NCBI RefSeq assembly: GCF_033153115.1 | Contig: NW_026889761.1 | Span: 20,708,001 to 20,772,000 of the forward strand | DNA length: 64,000 nucleotides | Direction of reading: 5' to 3' | Source of the DNA: Saccostrea echinata | Lineage: Eukaryota | Shown: piece by piece, positions 12,311 to 53,920 of the stretch | How positions within the stretch are numbered: position 1 is the first letter of the stretch | Layout of the letters: each line of letters starts with the position of its first letter | The notes under the pieces: model-generated | The model's database searches: none | Told to the model about the DNA's origin: nothing | The model's input: only the letters and a program-made list of their open reading frames with translations | Translations under genes and position numbers: made by a program

Positions 12311-12773
12311 TTTGATTGTCTTATCAGAAACGTTAATTCCAGTTATCTCTGTATTGTATTAAGACACCTTATCTAATTATTCATAGATATATAGTACGGT
12401 CATACATGCATATATGTACCTAACTTGTTCTCATTTGGAGAGGCTTTTGAATAAATTTATCATACTTTAGACAACTGAAAAGAGTTCATATATGTCTATA
12501 TTAAAGGATTGATGATAAAAAAACAGATTTAAACTGGCACTTGGGGACCAGTTTACTGAACTCTCATAGCTACCTGTATATTGTTTACATTTCAGCGACC
12601 AAAGAGAAAGTACTGATTTGATTTATATTCAGGTCAGTTTCACACAAATAGATAACATTTTGTAATATCCCTCCATTTTGAAAGTATTTTATTTGGCATA
12701 AATTTCAAACTTCAATTGGAACGTTCGTTTAGCAGTTAGATGAATAAGAGGCGTGTGGGTAATACAAAACAAA

Positions 12774-15024
12774 ATGGCTGCTAAAGACAGGGCACAACAT
12801 TTCATTATGTGTGAAAAGTGTCAAAGACCTGTAGAATTTACATGTGTTCCGTGTGAAATTAAACTCTGTGGAGAATGTTCTTTGAACCATATGCGCACGA
12901 AATCAAAACGAGGACATGAACTCCGGGAATATTCTCGGTCTTTGACACAGCAGTGTGACATACATCCTAGTTCTACATGTGACGTCTATTGTAAGTCCTG
13001 CTCTGTTCCAGTCTGCAGTGAATGTGTCGCTACAAATGAACATAAACTTCATGACCTTTCATCAATGTCTTTAATAACTACCTTTTTCGAAACATTGATA
13101 AAAGAAGAAAGTAATGAGTTACAAACAAAAGTTAAAGGCAACTTTGAGCAGTGTATTCAAGATATCAAGAGCAATCTTTCTACCGTATCTAAGCATTTTG
13201 CTGGTGTCAGACAAACACTCAAGCTATGGGGTAAAAAATGGCACCGTGAAATTACATCTCTTGAAGAATCTCTTGGAAAAGAACTAAAAGATGCAGAGGA
13301 CGAGGCTTTGAGGACTCTGAATGAGGAAAGGGCTCTTATGGAAAGCAAGATTCAGGACATTAATGAATCCATCAAGAAATACGAGGAACTACAAGCGTCA
13401 GAAAACCCTAAACTTCTCGTCAAATTTCAGTCTAAGTTAGACAAACTCAGTGAAATACCTACCCTGAGAAACTTCTGTGTTGTTAACTTTATTTCGACTG
13501 AACTACCAACTGATCTGAGGAAAGTCTTTGGAAATTTCAAGTCTTTTATTTGGCCTGTCGAATTTTCAAGTCTCTCAAAGATAAGGACATCAAAAGAAAG
13601 TAAGGCATAATTGACATTTTTTCAATGAAATATTGAGATAACGAACAGTATTCAAGCTCAAAATCCATTAAAACAATACAAATCGGGAGGAGAGCAAACA
13701 CGTACCTCCAAAAACAGAGGTGGGATCAGGTGCCATGGAGGAGTGAGCATCCCCTACCGACCGGTCTCACCAGCCGTGTGCTCCTTATCATGATCGAAAA
13801 ATCCGTCGACAATTCAGTGTGAAAATAGGTCTAACAATTAGTATGAAAAACGTCAGTCAGCATGAGACTTAATGGTAGATTGTATTTGCTGAAAAGGTCA
13901 TTGTATCGATCATAGAACTTACGAAATGATGACTTTAAACAAGACTGTTGATAATCTTGTTTCATCAACTTGTTTGTCAATAGAATTATTCATAAATTAA
14001 ATTCCTGTTCAATTGATTGAATTAAGTAATGTTAATTAAAATATATTTTAATCTAAGGAGATCAAAGAGTCTTCAAGAAAAAATAATTTTAAAAACATTT
14101 AAATATGTCTTAGAGATAAATAATACATAAAATGATGCATGGATTATATACTGATTTTGAATGTAAATCACACAAATAATAGATTTCTTAAATATAAAGA
14201 AATCGCTGGTTCTCCTTGGTGTGTAACTTTGTACCTTTTTCTATATAATTCAACAAAAGTTTTTGCACACTTTTTTATGACAATATTACAAAGTTATACA
14301 AAATTTCAAAATCTACACTGGCAAACGTATTCCGATTATTTATATGAAGATAATTCTCTTAGATGTAATGTCGCTTTCTGGAAAAAAAAAGTTCATTTGT
14401 GTTAGTATCCTTATTTGATGCACATTAAATCATTTATTTGCACAAATATAATAATACTTTAAACTATTTTTTAAAACAGTATTTTCAATTCTAAACAAGC
14501 AACATGGGAATTTATTCAACGTCCAAAAGGATTACGTATTGCACAAGGACGAGTATTTCCCTCCACAATTTACAAGATGTTCAGTTCAGCTACATTCAAA
14601 ACTTTTCTTTTGTCTTCGAAAGTCGAAACCTTTTCGTGAAAAGGTAGAGGCATTTCTAAAGGGAGTGGAAGCCAGACCACTTTGGTCAGAAAGCGAAGGT
14701 TGTGAAGAAGGAGCATATCTGAGTATAGAAAGTACAAACCCAGCTTCAAATTTGAGCGACGCATGGAAAAGAACTGTTTCCGATAAAGTACTAGAATTCC
14801 TTAAAAATTGGACGATAAATAGTATTTTTATACCTGAGTTTGTCTGGGATAGAGTGGTCGGAGAATTGAGAACTATTTCGATCCCTAATCCTGAAAACAC
14901 AGTTTGTTACACTGACAAAAAGCAGCGGAAAATATTTGTTATCGGCCAAGGAAGAGATTCATATACCTTGACTTTAACAATACAAGAAATTGTATGGAAA
15001 TTAACAGATCATAGACAATATTGA
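12774..15024 (+). CDS. RING-less TRIM-like protein A: B-box1, B-box2, coiled coil + C-terminal PARP14-like KH-type region (456 aa as modelled)
   Basis: Exon 12774-13599 (CEKC..C..C..LC.EC...H; CDIH...C..C...C.EC....H..H; heptad helix), donor A|GTAAG phase 1; exon 14480-15024 after ACAG, phase 1, in frame with ORF 14539-15024. The same structure recurs in the paralog. The PARP14 resemblance is from recall, not a search. Confidence 0.8.
13625..13985 (-). mobile_element. Penelope-like (Naiad-type) 3' fragment in TRIM-A intron
   Basis: Minus strand encodes LTNKLMKQDYQQSCLKSSFRKFY followed by the family 3' motif CTCACTCCTCCATGGCACCTGATCCCACC. Confidence 0.8.
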
Positions 15025-24564: not shown

Positions 24565-27100
24565 ATGGCTGCTAAAGACCGAGCACAACATTTCATAACG
24601 TGTGAAAAGTGCCAAAACCCTGTAGAATTTACTTGTGTTCCGTGTGAAATTAAACTCTGTGGAGAATGTTCTTTGAACCACATGCGCACGAAATCAAAAC
24701 AAGGACATGAACTCCGGGGATATTCTCGGTCTTTGACACAGCAGTGTGACATACACTTTAATTTTACATGTGATGTCTATTGTAAGTCATGCTCTACTCC
24801 AATCTGCAGTGAATGTGTCGCAACAAATGAACATAAACTTCACGACCTTTCATCAATGTCAATAATAACTAACTTCTTCGAAACATTGATTAAAGAAGAA
24901 AGTAATGAATTACAAACAAAAGTGAAACGCAACTTTGCGAAGTGTGTACAAGATATCGACAGAAATCTGTGTACGGTTTCTAAGCATTTTGCAGGTGTCA
25001 GACAAAAGCTTAAGCTTTGGGTTGAAAAATGGCATCATGAAATTACGTCTCTTGAAGAATCTCTTGGAAAAGAACTAAAAGATGCAGAGGACAAGACTTT
25101 GAGGACTTTGAGAGAGGAAAAAGCTCTCATGGAAAGTAAGATTGAAGAGATAAATGAGTCCATCAAGAAGTACGAGGACATGCATGCGTCAGAAAACCCT
25201 AAACTTCTCGTCAAATTTCAGTCTAAGCTAGACCAGCTCAGTGAATTACCTACACTGAAAAAACTTTATGTCTTCGACTTTATTTCTGCTGAATTTCCAT
25301 TTGATCTGAGAATCGTTTTTGGAAATTTCAAATCTTTTATTTGGCCTGTCGAATTTAGAAGTCTCTCAGAGATGAGAACATCAAAGGAAAGTAAGAAGTC
25401 GAACTTATGATTTCTTTAATAAAATAAAATTCATCTTTCTTTACGAGGGGTGATCAAAGCCTTCGCGAACTATTTCTATATTTACAAATCCACAATTCAA
25501 ATCAGAAAAAAATTTGGCACACAAAAAGTCATAAACATGTTCTATATATAGCATATGTCATGCAATTTTTGGTCCATGTTTATGACGCCACAATATGAAA
25601 ATGACGTCAATATGTAGGTGACTTGTGACGAAAAATGGGTTACTCAGTCTTACTCATGCACGGAACAGCTGTAAATTTTAACTTAAATCTTGGAAATTCC
25701 TTTGCAGTGGCATATAATAATATGTACAGGGTTTATGAAAACAAAGGACTTGCAAGAAGTTCAATCATTAACTGGATTGATTGTTTTAGTGAAAGAAGGG
25801 AGAGAGTTAAAAATGATGTTCGTTCTGGTGCCCAATGAAAGTCTGCTGGGAAAGAGATGTGACATTAGTTGAGCAATTTGTTTTAAAAGATCGCCACGTT
25901 ACAGTTTAAAAAATACTTGAATATCTTAACAATAAAATATCAATTAAATCCCTAAAATATCATTTACTACAGATTTTAAACCTATCAGATATGATAAACA
26001 GAACGCTTCCATACTTGATTCACAATTTAAAAACGACGCATCGAAGACAGAAGAGTCGGGTTGTGATGGTCACCATGCTCATTCTGGTAAAAGATATCCT
26101 TATCCATCCACCCTATGTCCGAGATTTGGCAATTTGTGACAAAAGAACTTTTCTTCTTATAAAAAATAACCTGCATAGTAAGAAATAGAAGACTCGGAAA
26201 AATCTTTTAGCTGCTGTGAACAGAACGCTACGGCGCATGTCACGTGAAAGCCTGAACCACGTGTTTCTCGCATGGGCAGAACGGTTGCCGATGTGCATTA
26301 AAACCGGAGGGGACTACTTTTAAAAAAAAATAATACACACTACTTTAATTTCTTTTATGGAAGTAATTCAATTAGTTTGCGAACTTTTTGATCACTCCTC
26401 GTAAATATGATTTCAATCCTTGAGGTTTCAATTATTTATTACAATATACTTTAAGGAGATCAAAGAGTCTTTAAGAAAAGGTAATTAACTTAAATATCAT
26501 TTTAAATGTATCTTGATGTTTATCGAATCATTTATTTGTTCCATATGAGTAATTATATTTTTTTTGTTAAATTCAGTATTGTCATTTGTTAACAAGCAAC
26601 ATGGAAACTTAATCAACATCCATGACGATTTGCACGACGAAAAGGGTACGTCTTCACAATTTAAAAGATGTTTGATCCAGCTACATCCTAAGCTTTTTCT
26701 TTGTCTTCGAAAGTCAAAGCTCTTCCGTGAAAAGTTAGATGCATTTCTTAAAGAAGTGGAAGCCAAACCAATTTGGTCAGAAAGCGAAGGTTTTGACGAG
26801 GAAGCACATTTGTGCATAGAAAGTACAAATGCAGCTTCACATATGAACGACGCGTGGAAAACGATTATTTCGGATTTACTGACAGGCTTTCTTAATAATT
26901 GGAAGATACGGCATATTACTGTACCTACTAGTCTCTGGGATAGAGTACTAGGAGAGTTAAGAACTATCTGGATCCCTAATCCTGAAAACATAGTTTGCTA
27001 CACTGAGAAAAAACAGCGGAAAATATTTGTTATAGGCCAAGAAAGAGACGCAGATACCTTGACATCAACTATTGAAAAACTTGTGCGTACGGGTATTTAG
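24565..27100 (+). CDS. RING-less TRIM-like protein B (paralog of 12774-15024), 449 aa as modelled
   Basis: Exon 24565-25390 (826 nt, same length as paralog A; A|GTAAG) and exon 26577-27100 after TTCAG, in frame, with no stops or frameshifts. A possible further donor G|GTATTT lies just before the stop. Confidence 0.8.
25444..26401 (+). mobile_element. Decayed mariner transposon in TRIM-B intron
   Basis: TA-CGAGGGGTGATCAAAG..TTCGCGAAC / GTTTGCGAACTTTTTGATCACTCCTCG-TA. Transposase remnants WIDCFSERRERVKNDVRSG (HTH) and HPPYVRDLAICD (HPPYSPDLAPCD motif); internally deleted. Confidence 0.9.
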
Positions 27101-33554: not shown

Positions 33555-36140
33555 AATTGTTCAGAAATTGTTAATGTGCGTGAAACCAAAGGTTCGCTTA
33601 ATAAATGAATATCGGGCATAGATTTCAAATTAACAATGCGGGCAAGCATCTTCTATCCAAGCACTTTGATTAACCTAGTCATTCTATTTTATCAATGAAA
33701 GTTAGAATTTTAGAAAAGATTCACCATCATACTTATAGCTCATCATTGAGTACAGCTTTCAGAGACAAAGAGAAGAATATTGGATTACAAAACTAAGCAC
33801 GGCCTTTCCATATCGATGCAATGACAATGTCGATAGTGATGGGAATCTTTCCAGTCCACAGTGTAGCAATATGAATGTGATGGGATTTTTAACAATACTC
33901 AGAGACGTATGCGTAGTCATGGACATCAGTCTTACAATAAACCTATTATACACGATGACTCCTTTGATTCACTACTGCCTTATGTAAATAAACAGTTAGG
34001 TCTTTATTACATTCAAACCAAACTTTACTCCGTCCCTTGAAATTTTTTAACAGCCTCTATGATTAAGTCGAGTGAAGTCCATATTTGGATTCTTCGACAC
34101 CAGAAAACAGACTCGGATCTGTGATTATGGATATTGCAAACCATATGTTTTTTAAATCGCCACGTTGTACGGAAGAAAATTCTGCTAAAATAACACGTTT
34201 TTCCCTTTAAACTTCAATATACCAACATAGGAATTGACGCCGTTAGCATACATGTAAGGAATATTCTGAGTCACAAAGGTTCCAGTCTTTTGAAGTTGAA
34301 GTCAGCACCTTGTATTTCTTACAATTATACATCGACAATTGCTTCAAGTCTTTTTAATTACAACTCGAAAGGGCCTAAATATCGAACATTTGAAACTTAA
34401 TCCTCCAACGTTTCATGTTCTTGTTCACCCTACATCTATAGTCCTGCTGGACACGTCATTACTGGTGAGGTAAATATAGTAAATAAAGAGGACCCTAAAT
34501 AACTTACTTAAAAAAGCCAAAATTTAGGGAACCTCAATTTTTCAACTGGCGTCATAATTCCATAAATATTATGCATTCTGTGGAAGATTACGCAAGGCGA
34601 TAGGCCAGACATAAAACACTTTGTCAGAATGGACTAAAGTATCAGATGAATGTTAAAATCTCTCATTCAGCAATTAAGGGGCAATATGAAAACCATCTCT
34701 CCTTCTCTGTTCAATAATTCAGAAGTGAAAAAATAATTAGATAGATTATACGACCAGTTTGTACTGAATTCAGCTGACAAAGTAGGTAACAACATTGTCT
34801 TTGTTTGTAAGGTTCATTATCTAAATTGTACATGTATTTAGGATGAACTTGGATTTAATTCTGCAAGTTTAGTCTAACTTATATCCAAAGCTCTCTTTCT
34901 TAGCAGGAAATTCTTCAAAATCATATGTCAGTTTTAAATATTTTTAACATTCCCAACAATCAAAATAAATTTGAATTACCATACCTATAATGGATTCCGA
35001 AACTTCAAAAAAGTCCTTACAAACAAAGATACATGGCGGATTCCAGTAAATGTTCCACAAAGTCTCTTCTTTACGTCTATCTAAAATTTCAAAAGCCGTG
35101 AAGGAGAGACTTCAGGAGTACAACAATATATTTGAGAAATGGTGTAAATCATACTTAAAAGTTCCAAGGAACTTTTAAAAAATTTGAAATCACAAGATTT
35201 TACCAAAATCATAAACATGAAAACGTACGACTTTTCAACACTTTATAAAACAATTCCTTACGATAAATTAAAGTTAAGACTTTTTGATATCATTGACAGC
35301 TGCTTTTTCAATAAAAATGAAATTTACTTACCTTGTCATTGTTCATTTGCAGCATAATTTTGTTAAAATACATTCTAATTGTACACACAAGTACTCTGAA
35401 GTTGATATTAAAAAGATGCTTGAGTTTCTGATTGACAATACCTATTTAGTTTTTTTAGATCAGGTCTTCCAACAATCTATCGGAATTCCCATGGGTACCA
35501 ATTGTTCCCCAATATTAGCCGACCTATTTTTGTATTCATATGAAGGAGAATTTATTCAAATATTTCTACATGACAAGAAGAAGACACTTGCTGTGGACTT
35601 CAACTCGACATTTAGATAAATTGATGTCGTAATATTGATAATATATAGTTACTCCCATTAATAAGTCGACTCGATATATCCAAGTGAGCTTGAAATAAAA
35701 GATATCGCAGAATCTCACACATCTGTTTCATATTTGGATATTTTACTACAAAAAGGTATTAATGGTCACCTAATAACCAAGCTTTATGATAAGCGTGATG
35801 ACTTCAACTTTTCAGTCGTGAACTTCCCTTCATTATGTAGCAAAATATCTTTATCACTTGCAGAAGGGGTTTACGTCTCCCAGTTGATTCGATACGCTAG
35901 AACATGCTCTACGTACGAACAATTTCTAACACAAGGCAAGCTATTGACAAACAAGTTGATGAAACAAAAATATCAACACTATCGTTTAAAGTCATCATTT
36001 TGCAAGTTCTATTGTTGATACAATGACCTTATCAGCAAATACAATCTATCAATAAGTCAAATGCTGACTGACGTTTTTCATACTAATTTTAGGCCATCAT
36101 TTACACACTGATTGTCTACGAATTTTTCCGATGTTCGGAT
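33555..36140 (+). mobile_element. Near full-length decayed Naiad-type Penelope-like retroelement (GIY-YIG endonuclease upstream of RT)
   Basis: EN remnants ETKGSLNK.ISGHR, KHF..PSHSILSMKVRILEKI, REEYWITKLSTAFPY.CND precede the RT motifs ADKVGNNIVFVCK, WIPKL, TYDFSTLY, GIPMGTNCSPILADLFLYSYE and KLYDKRDDFNF. Many stops and frameshifts. Confidence 0.88.
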
Positions 36141-36246: not shown

Positions 36247-36578
36247 GTTGATTGATAGATTGTATGTTGTTTTACGAGAATTTTTCACTCGAGACGTCAT
36301 CATATACCCCTAAGGGCTTCAAATTTAGACCTTTACTCGGCACTCAGGGCCATTGAGCAGAGAGGGGTCTTTATTGTGCCAACACCTACCGTGACACAGG
36401 GCCTCGGTTTTTAAGGTCTCATCCGAAGGACCCGCAATTTTCACTTCAAAGTGCCTAGCGTATGGCGAAGGAACAGTTGCTACCTTTTTCTATCGACTTG
36501 GTCAGTCGCGGCCGTGATTCGAACACACGACCTTCCGATCATGGAGCGAGCGCTCTACCGACTGAGCTACCGTGACGG
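36247..36578 (-). mobile_element. Full-length tRNA-derived SINE with 13-bp TSD
   Basis: Head GGTAGCTCAGTCGGTAGAGCG...GTTCGAATC, (CAAT)n-type tail, TSD TCACGCTATAAAG at 36234-36246 and 36579-36591. Confidence 0.92.
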
Positions 36579-49897: not shown

Positions 49898-50059
49898 NNN
49901 NNNNNNNNNNNNNNNNNNNNNNNNNNNNNNNNNNNNNNNNNNNNNNNNNNNNNNNNNNNNNNNNNNNNNNNNNNNNNNNNNNNNNNNNNNNNNNNNNNNN
50001 NNNNNNNNNNNNNNNNNNNNNNNNNNNNNNNNNNNNNNNNNNNNNNNNNNNNNNNNNNN
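49898..50059. other. Assembly gap (162 N)
   Basis: Run of N. Confidence 1.
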
Positions 50060-50904: not shown

Positions 50905-51402
50905 ACTGTGATTTATTCAATGAATAAAAGTGATATTCTCCCACAGTGTGAAAGGATACCAAAGTGATATTCTCTCACAGTGTGAAAGGATATCAAAGTA
51001 AGTAAAATATAATTTCTGGCCTGTAATAAGATTGAGATGGTAACTAAACCATCTTGACATTGACTAAAACTGCCAATTTCTTCTCAAATTGTTGCTAAAA
51101 TCCATGTAACAATGTTTTCATCTCACAACTGCTAAGCCATGACGTCTCAATTGCTCAACTATGACGTCACAGCCTATTACATTGCGTTAAGAAAAGACAG
51201 AGGCAAAAGGAAAATCAAAGAAAATGTAATAAATAGAAAATTCAATGTTTTGTAGTTGGATATGAAATTTATTTCACTCGTGAGACAGGATTTTCTGATA
51301 TTTTCACTCGTGCTTCGCACTCGTGAAAATATCATATAATCCTGTCCCACTCGTGAAATAAATTCCATATCCAACTACATAACATTGAATATCCTCTGTA
51401 TA
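50905..51402. mobile_element. Second long-hairpin non-autonomous element (left boundary uncertain)
   Basis: Tandem repeat of ~34 bp at ~50925-50998 and a ~150 bp imperfect hairpin at 51240-51390. Confidence 0.6.
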
Positions 51403-51889
51403 TTCACATTCAAATGTGAAATAAAATGAAAGATAACATTTAAAGTATTATATAAGTACTATGTAGCACATTATTGCATCCAACCTGGCAAGGCATTTAT
51501 ATAGAACAACATTTTATAAGATCTCCAACATGGATTTAGGGAGCGATGTAGTTGTGAGACCCAACTGGTAATGCTAGTAGATGAACTTGCCAGGAACATC
51601 CAGCACGGTAAACAAACCGACTTGATCCTGCCAGAGCAAGTTTTCTGCAAAAATCCATGTTACACCCGGGGTTCAGTCCTTGGTCCTATTCTATTCCTTG
51701 CATATATTAATTAATGATTTGCCGGAGCATGTAAAGTTTTAAGTTAGGCTCTTCGCAGACGATACTGTCATCTACATCATTATAGAAATCAATGCTCCAA
51801 GAAGATCTCAAGCAACTAGAGATTAGGAGACCCTGTGGGATATGGAATTCAATTCACTTAAGTAAATTATATACGGAACCAATTTTGAT

Positions 51890-51933
51890 GCACCAGATGC
51901 GCATTTCGACAAATTATGTCTCTTCAGTGATGC
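51890..51933 (-). ncRNA. Type I minimal hammerhead ribozyme (intact core)
   Basis: Minus strand GCAUCA CUGAAGA GACA UAAUU UGUC GAAA UGCGCA UC UGGUGC: stem I, CUGANGA, stem II, GAAA, palindromic stem III, AUC cleavage triplet. Confidence 0.88.
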
Positions 51934-52235
51934 TCAAGCAGAAACGTTGGAAATCCAAAATACTTCAATAAAAAAGACTTGGAAGAGATGAAAAAAGGTG
52001 CCAAAGACTGGAGCCAAATACGTCGGATCAGAGCTTTTCATGAGGGAGATAAATCATAATTTTGAAATAAATTTCTGAATTTTACGACAGCAATTAAATA
52101 TATATCCCGTATTTTCAAGCTAGTATCGAAGTACTAGGTAACTGAGCTGTAGAGACCCTCGGGGACTAACAGTCCACCAGCAGAGGCCTCTACTCAGGAG
52201 TCATAATGTAAATCATATACGGTACCAATTTTGAT

Positions 52236-52279
52236 GCACCAGATGCGCATCTCGACAAATTATGTCTCTTCAGTGATGC
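52236..52279 (-). ncRNA. Type I hammerhead ribozyme copy with core variant GAAA to GAGA
   Basis: Identical to 51890-51933 except for one substitution in the GAAA box. Confidence 0.8.
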
Positions 52280-53424
52280 TCAAACCGAAACGTTGGAAAT
52301 TCAAAATATTTAAATAAAAAAGACATGGAAGAGCTGAAAAAAGGTAAGTGTCAGGTTATCCATGTATCAACATCCAGATCGACTAAATATTGCATGATAA
52401 GATATTAGAGACTACACATCAGCTCGGTATCTGGGTGTCGATATATCGGATAGCTTGAGTTGGAGTCAGCACATCAGCCGGGTTACAAGCAAAGCCAATA
52501 ATTATAGCTCATTTGGCTTACTACAAAGAAACATTCCAACTAGGAGCCGCCAGCTTCGATTAGCAGCATACAAGGCTGAGGTGCATCTACAGCTTTCAGC
52601 GTTTGAGACCCTACGTAGGTACATATACCAACCAATTTGAGGCAGTACAGGGCAGAACTGCAAGATCAGACTACAGTAGAATATCAAGTTTGCTACCTAG
52701 CTACCTTTGCATGGTTGGCGCAGTTTGCAATTAAAGAGGACTGGTGCCAGGCTTGTATTGAAGTACAAGAACGTACATGGTCTAGGAGCCATCCCTTCAG
52801 TTCAACTTATTTCCCCCAGCAGGACTACTCGGTCATTATATCATTTCCTCACCTTTCGTCAGATTCAAACCAAAATGTTTACATGTAATTTTTTTTCACT
52901 TACTATAGTTCAATGGAAGAGATCGCCAGACAGTGTTGTCTTACCTCCTGATATTGAACAATTCAAACTGGAGGTGGGCAAACTGAATCGTTACATAAGA
53001 GTCCTTTTACCTCTTTTAATTGTGAATACTGTTTTCCTAAACTTCCGTAATCACTAATATTAGAAAATTGTTTTCCTTTTTATTCTATTGAAATTTTCAA
53101 CTATCTCCTACTTTTATCTTTTAACCAGCTGTGCATCCTATTAAAGGTACTATATTCAGAGGACGAATAGTACCGAGAGATAGATAGATGGGTATAGAAT
53201 TGAATACACGACGCATTCCATTTTAATTTCCATAGTTCGGCCAACTACTTCAGACACAGTGATAACCAGAAATTGACAAGCATATTAGGCACTTGATCTT
53301 TCATTTTGTATGAAATCTACATTCAGTTGTAAATATCAAGAAATTAACGCATTCACTTTCAAAGAATTATCAAAGAGAGAAACAGTTGGAAATGTAAATA
53401 TTTGAATTTAAACGCTGAATCTGT

Positions 53425-53920
53425 CAAATAAACATTAAACGAGACTGTTGATTTTCTTGTTTCATCAACTTGTTTGTCAATAACTTACCACGTTTAAGAA
53501 GTTGTTCATACGTAGAGCATGCTCTTGCGTATCGAATCAATTGAGAGATATATACACCATATGCAGGTGATAAGGGTAGGTTGACGATTGAAATGTTAAA
53601 ATCATAACGTTTATCATAAAGCTTTGTTGTTAGATTACCATTAACGTCTTTTTCTAGTAAAATATCCCAATATGAAACAGATGTGTCAGACTCTGTGGTA
53701 TCTTTTATTTTAAGCTCACTGGGATATATAATATCGACATATGAATGGAAATAACTATTGTTACATGCAATTGATAATACGTCGTCGATATATCTAAATG
53801 TCGAGTTGAAGGCCACAGGAGATTTTTTAATCATGTATAAGATTTTGAATAAATTCTGCTTCATATGAATACAAAAATAGGTCTGCTTATAACGGGTCGC
53901 AATTGGTACCCATGGGAATT
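53425..53920 (-). mobile_element. Penelope-like RT fragment
   Basis: IPMGTNCDP, FRYIDDVLSI, ELKIKDTTESDTSVSYWDILL, SPAYGVYISQLIRYARACS. Confidence 0.88.

What the first reader, a model, noticed from the sequence alone, without database searches (positions are those of the whole stretch)
51864..52344. Retrozyme-like element: tandem hammerhead ribozymes 346 nt apart, retro-inserted with a TSD
Seen: a non-coding 481-bp insert (1.4 monomers) splits a LINE at MEFN..|KCQV and is flanked by TAAGT repeats. Each repeat has a type I hammerhead on the minus strand (CUGAAGA, stem II GACA/UGUC, GAAA, AUC site). Known: metazoan non-LTR retrozymes are tandem few-hundred-nt repeats with minimal hammerheads that yield circular RNAs and are thought to be mobilised by Penelope-like RTs. 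Inference: a family producing ~346-nt circRNA, copied from a circular or multimeric template (the more-than-unit length fits), with the abundant local Penelope-like elements as candidate helpers.
Basis: partly seen in the sequence, partly recalled or inferred. Interest (0 to 1): 0.8.

Follow-up and report, generated by a model that had tools for sequence, protein, structure and literature searches.

The report
Decayed hammerhead retrozyme insertion in LINE
This is one worn-out copy of a small non-coding jumping element (a "retrozyme") that carries a self-cutting hammerhead RNA motif. It has about two thousand sister copies in this mollusc genome and a visibly related, published counterpart in mussels, so it is real but an ordinary member of a known kind.

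Summary
Window 51865-52344 is a 480-bp non-coding insert of 1.4 units with a 346-nt period. It splits a decayed LINE reverse transcriptase, and paralogous uninterrupted LINE copies confirm the 5-bp TAAGT duplication. Both repeats carry a minimal type I hammerhead on the minus strand (Rfam Hammerhead_1: 32.1 and 27.7 bits, gathering score 34). The upstream one has a core mutation (GAAA to GAGA at 52251) and is probably dead.

The family gave about 1,900-2,000 first-look candidates in this genome. Copies have a fixed 3' end 36-37 nt past the ribozyme cut, a variable 5' end, and lengths of 0.3 to 3.9 units. These are the insertion habits of Penelope-like elements (PLEs). By eye the unit is homologous to the published Mytilus galloprovincialis retrozyme, with compensatory changes in the ribozyme helices.

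Units within one insertion share template-specific variants, so each insertion was copied from one repeated unit. That fits a circle or a homogeneous multimer and does not tell them apart.

RNA reads showed no molecule ends at the cut site, so circular RNA remains untested. The helper element was not found, and the local Penelope-like fragments are not specifically implicated. The scan has flagged this same family elsewhere in this genome.

The parts
51865..52344 (-). Retrozyme insertion of 1.4 units. In element sense it runs 52344 -> 51865. Its 5' end lies at unit position ~212 and its 3' end at the family's usual terminus (...CCGUAUAUAAUUU, plus AC shared with the target).
   Evidence: Empty-site paralogs.
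51860..51864 (.). Target-site duplication, copy 1 (TAAGT).
   Evidence: paralogous LINE copies have this pentamer once.
52345..52349 (.). Target-site duplication, copy 2 (TAAGT).
51890..51933 (-). Canonical minimal type I hammerhead, the 3'-proximal one. The cut is predicted between 51896 and 51895.
   Evidence: RF00163, 32.1 bits, E 3.5e-6; (the dimer folds as a double hammerhead).
52236..52279 (-). Second hammerhead, the 5'-proximal one, with the core GAAA changed to GAGA at 52251. Predicted inactive.
   Evidence: 27.7 bits.
51865..51895 (-). 3' tail between the ribozyme cut and the element's end (UGGUGCAUCAAAAUUGGUUCCGUAUAUAAUUU). It is the fixed 3' terminus of all family copies.
51480..51864 (+). 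Decayed LINE reverse-transcriptase fragment, upstream half (…QHGFRERCSCETQL…, …FADD…, …WDMEFNSLK).
   Evidence: Pfam did not score a 64-aa stop-free piece.
52345..52900 (+). The same LINE fragment, downstream half (KCQVIHV…), with several stops.

Best explanation
The insert is an old, inert copy of a non-autonomous, non-coding retrotransposon of the metazoan non-LTR retrozyme kind.

Shown:
- The family unit is ~346 nt. It carries one minimal type I hammerhead whose stem III is a single A-U pair around the palindrome UGCGCA.
- Two such motifs are predicted to pair through the 8-nt palindrome AUGCGCAU into a double hammerhead.
- Every copy ends at the same place, 36-37 nt 3' of the ribozyme cut. 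5' ends fall anywhere in the unit. Total length runs continuously from 0.3 to 3.9 units.
- The units of one insertion share the same template-specific variants.
- This copy landed in a LINE RT gene and made a 5-bp duplication.

Inferred:
- An enzyme of a Penelope-like element nicked the target.
- Reverse transcription started at an internal, sequence-defined site just downstream of the ribozyme. The template RNA was uncut or religated across the ribozyme site, that is, a monomer circle read round and round or a homogeneous multimer.
- Synthesis stopped after 1.4 turns.
- An insertion longer than about 1.2 units carries two ribozymes flanking a full unit, so it could release a unit-length RNA if transcribed.

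In this copy the upstream ribozyme is mutated and the sequence is 6% from the family majority, so it is most likely dead.
For: - Repeat, hammerheads, TSD and empty sites.
- Family size and layout: 2006 and 1921 first-look candidates in the window's own genome. The score-ranked sample has the layout [X..347]+n x [1..347]. In the 3'-anchored sample of 27, all but one rearranged or interrupted copy (L068) end at unit position 1-10, with lengths of 97-634 nt.
- TSDs: clear examples of 5 to at least 20 bp in L049, L008, L011, L010 and L016.
- Age: units are 94.6% identical to the family majority and 89% pairwise. The window copy is 93.7% identical to the majority.
- One template per insertion: 62% of common non-majority variants are shared by both units of one insertion, against 12% between insertions (Fisher 6e-43). 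A further 82 private variants are shared within insertions.
- Ribozyme state: the core is intact in 44 of 55 units and all helices in 39 of 55. 13 of 64 insertions keep two or more canonical ribozymes.
- Double hammerhead: cofold gives -30.3 kcal/mol against 2 x -10.0 for the monomers.
- Co-resident canonical PLEs: L086 and L087 have RVT_1 plus a C-terminal GIY-YIG, 100% identical pseudo-LTRs, minimal hammerheads with palindromic stem III (AAUU, AGCGCU), and a 42-nt tail after the cut in L086.
- Literature: the published mussel retrozyme Mg353 has the same layout and visibly homologous blocks (PMC7229834). PLE insertion anatomy is described in PMC8557442. The retrozyme-PLE link is argued in bioRxiv 10.64898/2026.07.22.740005.
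Against: - No autonomous element sharing the retrozyme's hammerhead and tail was found among the two full PLEs and five further 3' regions inspected.
- Those two PLE copies sit in (TA)n microsatellites. The retrozyme copies do not.
- Most insertions show no TSD above the null.
- The RNA run shows reads on both strands, and 82% of them run on into unrelated sequence. 336 reads leave the 3' end into varied flanks, 4 continue into a next unit, and no molecule ends pile up at the cut.
- Predicted circular folds are no more stable than shuffles (z -1.1 to -1.6, one +0.95).
- Homology to the mussel element was judged by eye only.
Confidence: 0.85

Rival explanations
1. Same element and same helper, but no circular RNA is involved. 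The template is a linear, uncut multimeric or read-through transcript. Alternatively, the more-than-unit length arises from the template switching that gives autonomous PLEs their pseudo-LTRs. This rivals only the circle part of the first reader's inference. It is compatible with the best explanation, which leaves the template form open.
For: - Autonomous PLEs of 3.8 kb in this genome show the same partial-tandem layout with 100% identical pseudo-LTRs, and nobody invokes circles for them (PMC8557442).
- The RNA reads give no sign of cut ends or of abundant unit-to-unit junctions.
- 38% of common variants differ between units of one insertion.
Against: - The related mussel family was shown by northern blot and RT-PCR to accumulate mainly as circles (PMC7229834).
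- Units within insertions mostly share template variants.
- The 3' end lies 36-37 nt beyond a ribozyme cut site, so the template must be uncut or religated there.
Confidence: 0.4
2. It is a fragment (solo pseudo-LTR or internally deleted copy) of an autonomous Penelope-like element, not a separate non-autonomous family.
For: Hammerhead plus tail near the 3' end and the partial tandem layout are PLE features.
Against: - None of 64 distinct insertions adjoins an RT or GIY-YIG ORF.
- The 346-nt unit repeats head to tail with nothing between the units.
- The unit gave no significant BLAST match (best E 0.014, an 18-nt stretch) to the two PLEs or five PLE 3' regions examined.
Confidence: 0.04
3. 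It is a Pol III-driven SINE-like element (tRNA-headed) that merely carries a hammerhead.
For: - A B-box-like GGGTCGAGGCC sits at unit positions ~15-25 in majority copies and is kept in the mussel element.
- Another scan note (s1-814368) speaks of a tRNA-headed 340-bp unit.
Against: - ARAGORN finds no tRNA in five loci.
- Rfam at E up to 10 finds only Hammerhead_1 in a near-majority dimer.
- There is no A-rich or T-run terminus.
Confidence: 0.05
4. It is a short satellite array spread by DNA-level processes, and the hammerhead match is incidental.
For: Tandem units. Low-level bidirectional RNA, as for any repeat.
Against: - Empty-site paralogs with a TSD.
- A fixed 3' end with graded 5' truncation in 60+ dispersed copies.
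- The Rfam covariance-model match.
- Compensatory changes against the mussel ribozyme (by eye).
Confidence: 0.01

Closest known systems
Mytilus galloprovincialis non-LTR retrozyme (clone Mg353, HHR families A/B; Cervera & de la Pena 2020, PMC7229834)
   Same: - Unit size: about 350 nt there, 346 nt here.
- One type I hammerhead per unit, with the stem III loop a 6-nt palindrome (CGCGCG there, UGCGCA here).
- The same order of blocks: ...UUUGGAUUUC...GAGCRUCACUGAWGAG...GAAA-palindrome-UC|UGGYG...AAAUUGGU...CUGGGUCGAKGCC.CUGCUGGUGGA...CCGAGGGU.
- Thousands of copies, in a bivalve host.
- Differences in stem I (G-C vs A-U), stem II (U-A vs A-U) and the outer palindrome pair (C..G vs U..A) are compensatory.
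   Different: - Most of the remaining sequence differs.
- Stem II has 4 bp with a 5-nt loop here, against 3 bp with a 7-nt loop there.
- Circles and self-cleavage were shown for the mussel element and not for this one.
- The comparison was made by eye from the supplement, not with an aligner.
Pseudo-LTR with minimal hammerhead of canonical EN+ Penelope-like elements (Cervera & de la Pena 2014; Craig et al. 2021, PMC8557442). Examples in this genome: L086 and L087.
   Same: - Minimal type I hammerhead with a palindromic stem III that needs a partner.
- The ribozyme sits a few tens of nt from the 3' end (42 nt in L086, 36-37 nt here).
- Insertions are a full unit preceded by a 5'-truncated unit.
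- TSDs are variable or absent.
- Adjacent inverted copies occur occasionally.
   Different: - No ORF, and a unit ten times shorter.
- No sequence similarity to the PLEs inspected.
- No (TA)n target preference.
Axolotl and newt satellite-2-type retrozymes with dimeric hammerheads
   Same: - Tandem units of about 330-350 nt.
- The ribozyme is efficient only as a dimer.
   Different: - Vertebrate host and unrelated sequence.
- Much longer arrays and up to 10^5 copies.
Plant LTR retrozymes
   Same: Non-autonomous, ribozyme-bounded unit thought to spread through circular RNA.
   Different: Plant retrozymes have type III hammerheads, true LTRs, PBS and PPT, 4-bp TSDs and Gypsy helpers. None of these is present here.

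Membership tests
Metazoan non-LTR retrozyme | A type I hammerhead ribozyme motif in each repeat unit | tested here: met
   RF00163 scores 32.1 and 27.7 bits in the window and 32.1 and 26.2 bits in L017. Manual helix assignment agrees. 44 of 55 family units keep the core. In this copy one of the two motifs has a core mutation.
Metazoan non-LTR retrozyme | Short (150-450 bp) non-coding unit present head to tail, in many copies, with low GC | tested here: met
   346-nt period. 1.4 units here and 0.3-3.9 units elsewhere. About 1,900-2,000 first-look candidates. No ORF longer than 59 aa. GC 37%.
Metazoan non-LTR retrozyme | No LTR, PBS or PPT; retro-insertion with TSDs when visible | tested here: met
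   The 5-bp TSD is proven by empty paralogous sites. TSDs of 5 to at least 20 bp occur in some other copies, and most others are undetectable.
Metazoan non-LTR retrozyme | Expressed as unit-length linear and circular RNA | tested here: inconclusive
   RNA reads exist, but they lie on both strands, mostly run into flanks, and show no ends at the cut. The library is ordinary cDNA RNA-Seq and is not suited to small circles.
Metazoan non-LTR retrozyme | Self-cleavage of the transcript | not testable with these tools
   Only a fold prediction is available: the double hammerhead is favoured by about 10 kcal/mol over two monomers.
Mytilus-type bivalve retrozyme lineage | Sequence homology to the published Mg353 unit | tested here: inconclusive
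   Blocks match by eye, with compensatory helix changes. No alignment was run because outside sequence may not be typed into the tools.
Terminal repeat (pseudo-LTR) of an autonomous Penelope-like element | Adjoins an RT plus GIY-YIG ORF | tested here: not met
   64 distinct insertions lie in unrelated flanks. The unit gave no significant match (best E 0.014, 18 nt) to L086, L087 or L088-L092.
Plant LTR retrozyme | Type III hammerheads inside LTRs, plus PBS and PPT | tested here: not met
   Here the open helix is stem I, which makes it type I. No LTRs are present.
tRNA-derived SINE | tRNA-like head with A and B boxes | tested here: not met
   ARAGORN finds none in five loci. Rfam finds no tRNA match at E up to 10. 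Only a B-box-like 11-mer is present.

The most novel reading that the evidence does not exclude
The family's genomic footprints would be direct evidence that a Penelope-type enzyme starts reverse transcription at a defined internal site of a circular ribozyme RNA and runs round it. The footprints are an invariant 3' end 36-37 nt downstream of the ribozyme cut, a continuum of lengths beyond one unit, and template-private variants repeated in every unit of an insertion. The model was proposed in 2020 but has not, to my knowledge, been documented from insertion anatomy. On this reading the palindromic stem III acts as a switch: multimers cut themselves and monomer circles stay intact.
Probability: 0.35. 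Interest if true: 0.5.

Novelty: new member of a known kind. Interest (0 to 1): 0.25.

Why it matters
For this window it matters little. The copy is old, one ribozyme is broken, and it sits in a dead LINE.

For the family, the sampled insertions give a clean, quantifiable picture of how these elements integrate:
- a fixed start just past the ribozyme;
- graded 5' truncation;
- more than one turn of the same template.

Together with the young hammerhead-bearing PLEs in the same genome, that makes this mollusc a reasonable system in which to test the proposed dependence of retrozymes on Penelope-like elements and the role of circular RNA templates. It also warns annotators that Rfam's gathering threshold and speed filters miss these minimal hammerheads.

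Tried and rejected
- Rfam at the gathering threshold on the whole window, and at E up to 10 on an 800-nt stretch, found no hammerhead. A narrower scan did, so the earlier blanks were filter effects.
- Pfam on a 64-aa stop-free piece of the host LINE found nothing. I used paralogous DNA copies instead.
- A systematic TSD search with loose tolerances barely exceeded the null. Only some copies have clear TSDs.
- Intra- versus inter-insertion identity gave a weak signal (0.908 vs 0.89). The shared-variant test replaced it.
- Circular and linear folds of whole units are not unusually stable, so I dropped the rod-like structure argument.
- tRNA-likeness of the unit was rejected.
- The search for the autonomous partner failed:
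  - Two full PLEs (L086, L087) and five 600-nt regions downstream of other GIY-YIG hits show other hammerheads or none, and no significant similarity to the unit.
- The excess of 5' ends at unit positions 308-314 in the first sample did not recur in the 3'-anchored sample.
Those comparisons are by eye.
- No family consensus was printed or saved.

Full report
**What is there.** Window 51862-51999 and 52208-52345 are direct repeats, 93% identical, with a start-to-start spacing of 346 nt. Read on the minus strand, each carries the string GCAUCA-CUGAAGA-GACA-UAAUU-UGUC-GAAA-UGCGCA-UC|UGGUGC. This is a type I hammerhead: stem I is open (GCAUCA/UGGUGC, 6 bp including one G-U), stem II is 4 bp with a 5-nt loop, the CUGANGA and GAAA cores are present, and stem III is reduced to one A-U pair around the palindrome UGCGCA. 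The 32-nt core string occurs twice in the window, with none expected from shuffles.

Rfam's Hammerhead_1 model scores the two sites 32.1 bits (E 3.5e-6, 51890-51933) and 27.7 bits (E 1e-4, 52236-52279). Both are just below the gathering score of 34. Broader scans missed them because of the speed filters.

In the copy at 52236-52279 the GAAA core is GAGA (window 52251), so an invariant core base is changed and that ribozyme is probably dead.

**The insertion.** The flanks are a decayed LINE reverse transcriptase (…QHGFRERCSCETQL…, …WDMEFNSLK | KCQVIHV…). Seven paralogous copies of that LINE exist in the window's own genome. In four of them the sequence runs straight through as WDMEFNPSKCQVIHV with one TAAGT. 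The window has TAAGT on both sides of the insert (51860-51864 and 52345-52349). The insertion and its 5-bp target-site duplication are therefore proven by empty sites, not merely inferred. The insert is 480 bp, has 37% GC, and is overlapped by no ORF longer than 59 aa.

**The family.** The unit gave 2006 first-look candidates in the 923-Mb genome, and its last 82 nt gave 1921. These are lower bounds on a family of roughly two thousand copies.

I sampled 64 distinct insertions in two ways:
- The score-ranked sample always has the layout [unit position X to 347] followed by n full units.
- In the sample anchored only on the 3' region, insertions are 97 to 634 nt long, a continuum from 0.28 to 1.83 units. 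All but one rearranged or interrupted copy (L068, which stops at position 153) end at unit position 1-10, that is at …CCGTATATGATTTACAT(T).

This terminus lies 36-37 nt downstream of the ribozyme cut. The 5' ends fall anywhere in the unit. None of the insertions adjoins an RT or endonuclease ORF, and the flanks are unrelated to each other. TSDs are clear in some copies (at least 20 bp in L049, 8-9 bp in L008, 5-7 bp in L011, L010, L016 and the window). In most copies they cannot be told from the null.

Units are 94.6% identical to the family majority and 89% identical to each other, a star-like old burst. The window copy is 93.7% identical to the majority. The ribozyme core is intact in 44 of 55 units, and all helices and the palindrome in 39. 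13 of 64 insertions keep two or more canonical ribozymes about 345 nt apart.

**What the template looked like.** The 3' end lies beyond a cut site, and most insertions longer than a unit cross one or two further cut sites. The RNA copied must therefore have been uncut or religated there.

Units within one insertion carry the same template-specific variants. 62% of common non-majority variants are shared by both units, against 12% for units of different insertions (Fisher 6e-43). A further 82 variants private to one insertion are present in both of its units. Each insertion thus repeats one template unit. Rolling reverse transcription of a monomer circle would give this, and so would a homogeneous multimer. 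The data do not separate the two.

**The ribozyme.** Alone, the 49-nt motif folds into stem II plus an alternative hairpin that buries the cut site (-10.0 kcal/mol). Two motifs cofold into the classical double hammerhead, with an 8-bp AUGCGCAU duplex as stem III and stem I formed in trans (-30.3 kcal/mol). This is a prediction, not a test. It matches what is published for newt, axolotl and Penelope minimal hammerheads. It would mean that multimers cut themselves while a monomer circle does not.

**RNA.** One raw RNA-Seq run of the same organism label laid 2706 reads on a near-majority dimer (L017). They lay on both strands, and 82% ran on into unlike sequence. 336 reads left the 3' end into heterogeneous flanks, and only 4 continued into a next unit. 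No pile-up of molecule ends appeared at the cut. This looks like read-through of dispersed copies. The library is ordinary cDNA RNA-Seq, so it says little about small circles. The reads also reveal an expressed sub-variant in which a 66-nt segment upstream of the ribozyme is replaced by 34 other letters. Runs labelled 'mollusc metagenome' also hold parts of the sequence.

**Comparison with what is known.** Cervera and de la Pena (2020, PMC7229834) defined metazoan non-LTR retrozymes. They showed that a 350-390-nt family in Mytilus galloprovincialis, with about 5000 hammerheads, accumulates as circular RNA.

Their clone Mg353, printed in the supplement, has the same block order as this unit and visibly homologous stretches. 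These are the hammerhead, AAAUUGGU, CUGGGUCGAKGCC-CUGCUGGUGGA and CCGAGGGU. The differences in the helices are compensatory:
- third pair of stem I: G-C there, A-U here;
- second pair of stem II: U-A there, A-U here;
- outer pair of the palindrome: C..G there, U..A here.

I made this comparison by eye only, since outside sequence may not be typed into the tools.

The insertion anatomy matches that of Penelope-like elements as described by Craig et al. 2021 (PMC8557442). That anatomy is a full unit preceded by a 5'-truncated one, the ribozyme near the 3' end followed by a short tail, and variable TSDs. [quoted passage not shown]

**Helpers.** The genome gave at least 1175 first-look candidates for the GIY-YIG domain. 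[quoted passage not shown] Both have 100% identical pseudo-LTRs, sit in (TA)n, and carry minimal hammerheads with palindromic stem III (A-AU-U and A-GCGC-U). The L086 tail after the cut is 42 nt. HHR-bearing canonical PLEs that look young therefore co-reside with the retrozyme.

Neither these two nor five further PLE 3' regions share sequence with it, so the actual partner is unknown. The window's own PLE-like fragments (35284-35619 and 53424-53864) are decayed. The fragment at 53424-53864 was compared with both families: it is about 23% identical to L086 and has no significant match to L087. Nothing ties them to this insert.

**Verdict.** The element is a new, probably orthologous-lineage member of a published kind, and this particular copy is dead.

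Other notes of this scan had already flagged the same 347-nt family elsewhere in this genome (s1-807539) and call the organism an oyster. I did not verify the organism beyond the mollusc label on some runs.

Noticed in passing
L086 (G000:C9:45658300-45665600) and L087 (G000:C14:14774900-14782200): Two canonical Penelope-like elements: RVT_1 plus C-terminal GIY-YIG in ORFs of 951 and 778 aa. L087 also has a 416-aa upstream ORF. Both have 100% identical pseudo-LTRs and are inserted in (TA)n microsatellites. Each carries a minimal hammerhead with a palindromic stem III. L087 also has an adjacent inverted copy of at least 190 nt. They look very young.
   Followed up: partly
L024 (G000:C54 ~831 kb) and L043 (G000:C30 ~25.817 Mb): The same tail-to-tail inverted pair of retrozyme insertions (about 425 nt abutting about 700 nt on the other strand) occurs at two loci. 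This is either a segmental duplication or a recurrent two-armed insertion.
   Followed up: no
L057 (G000:C48:381 kb) and L058 (G000:C58:1.78 Mb): An identical 428-nt retrozyme insertion with identical flanks lies on two contigs. This is probably a haplotig or a recent segmental duplication.
   Followed up: no
L017:1718-1783 (reads of run X21): RNA reads reveal a family sub-variant in which a 66-nt segment upstream of the hammerhead is replaced by a different 34-nt segment. 424 reads share only the hammerhead and tail. This variant is better represented in the RNA run than the window's subfamily.
   Followed up: no
window 51229-51401: Near-perfect hairpin: two 85-nt arms, 85% complementary, 3 nt apart, just upstream of the LINE fragment. 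It contains repeated TCNCACTCGTGAAA motifs.
   Followed up: no
window 51480-51863 vs paralogs L033, L034 and others: The host LINE copy lacks about 135 nt that its paralogs have between query positions 156 and 157. It also carries many stops, so it is an old, internally deleted copy.
   Followed up: no
window 36504-36576 (-): A tRNA gene (Rfam RF00005, 36 bits, above the gathering score).
   Followed up: no
window 12753-13610 (+) and 24565-25410 (+): Two paralogous ORFs of 285 and 281 aa, with cysteine-rich B-box-like starts and coiled-coil-like tails. They are also noted by another reader of this window.
   Followed up: no
window 49898-50059: A run of 162 N (assembly gap or mask). Left untouched.
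   Followed up: no
unit positions ~15-25 of majority copies (e.g. L017:1513-1530): GGGTCGAGGCC resembles a Pol III B box and is kept in the published mussel retrozyme (GGGTCGATGCC). No tRNA-like fold was detected.
   Followed up: partly
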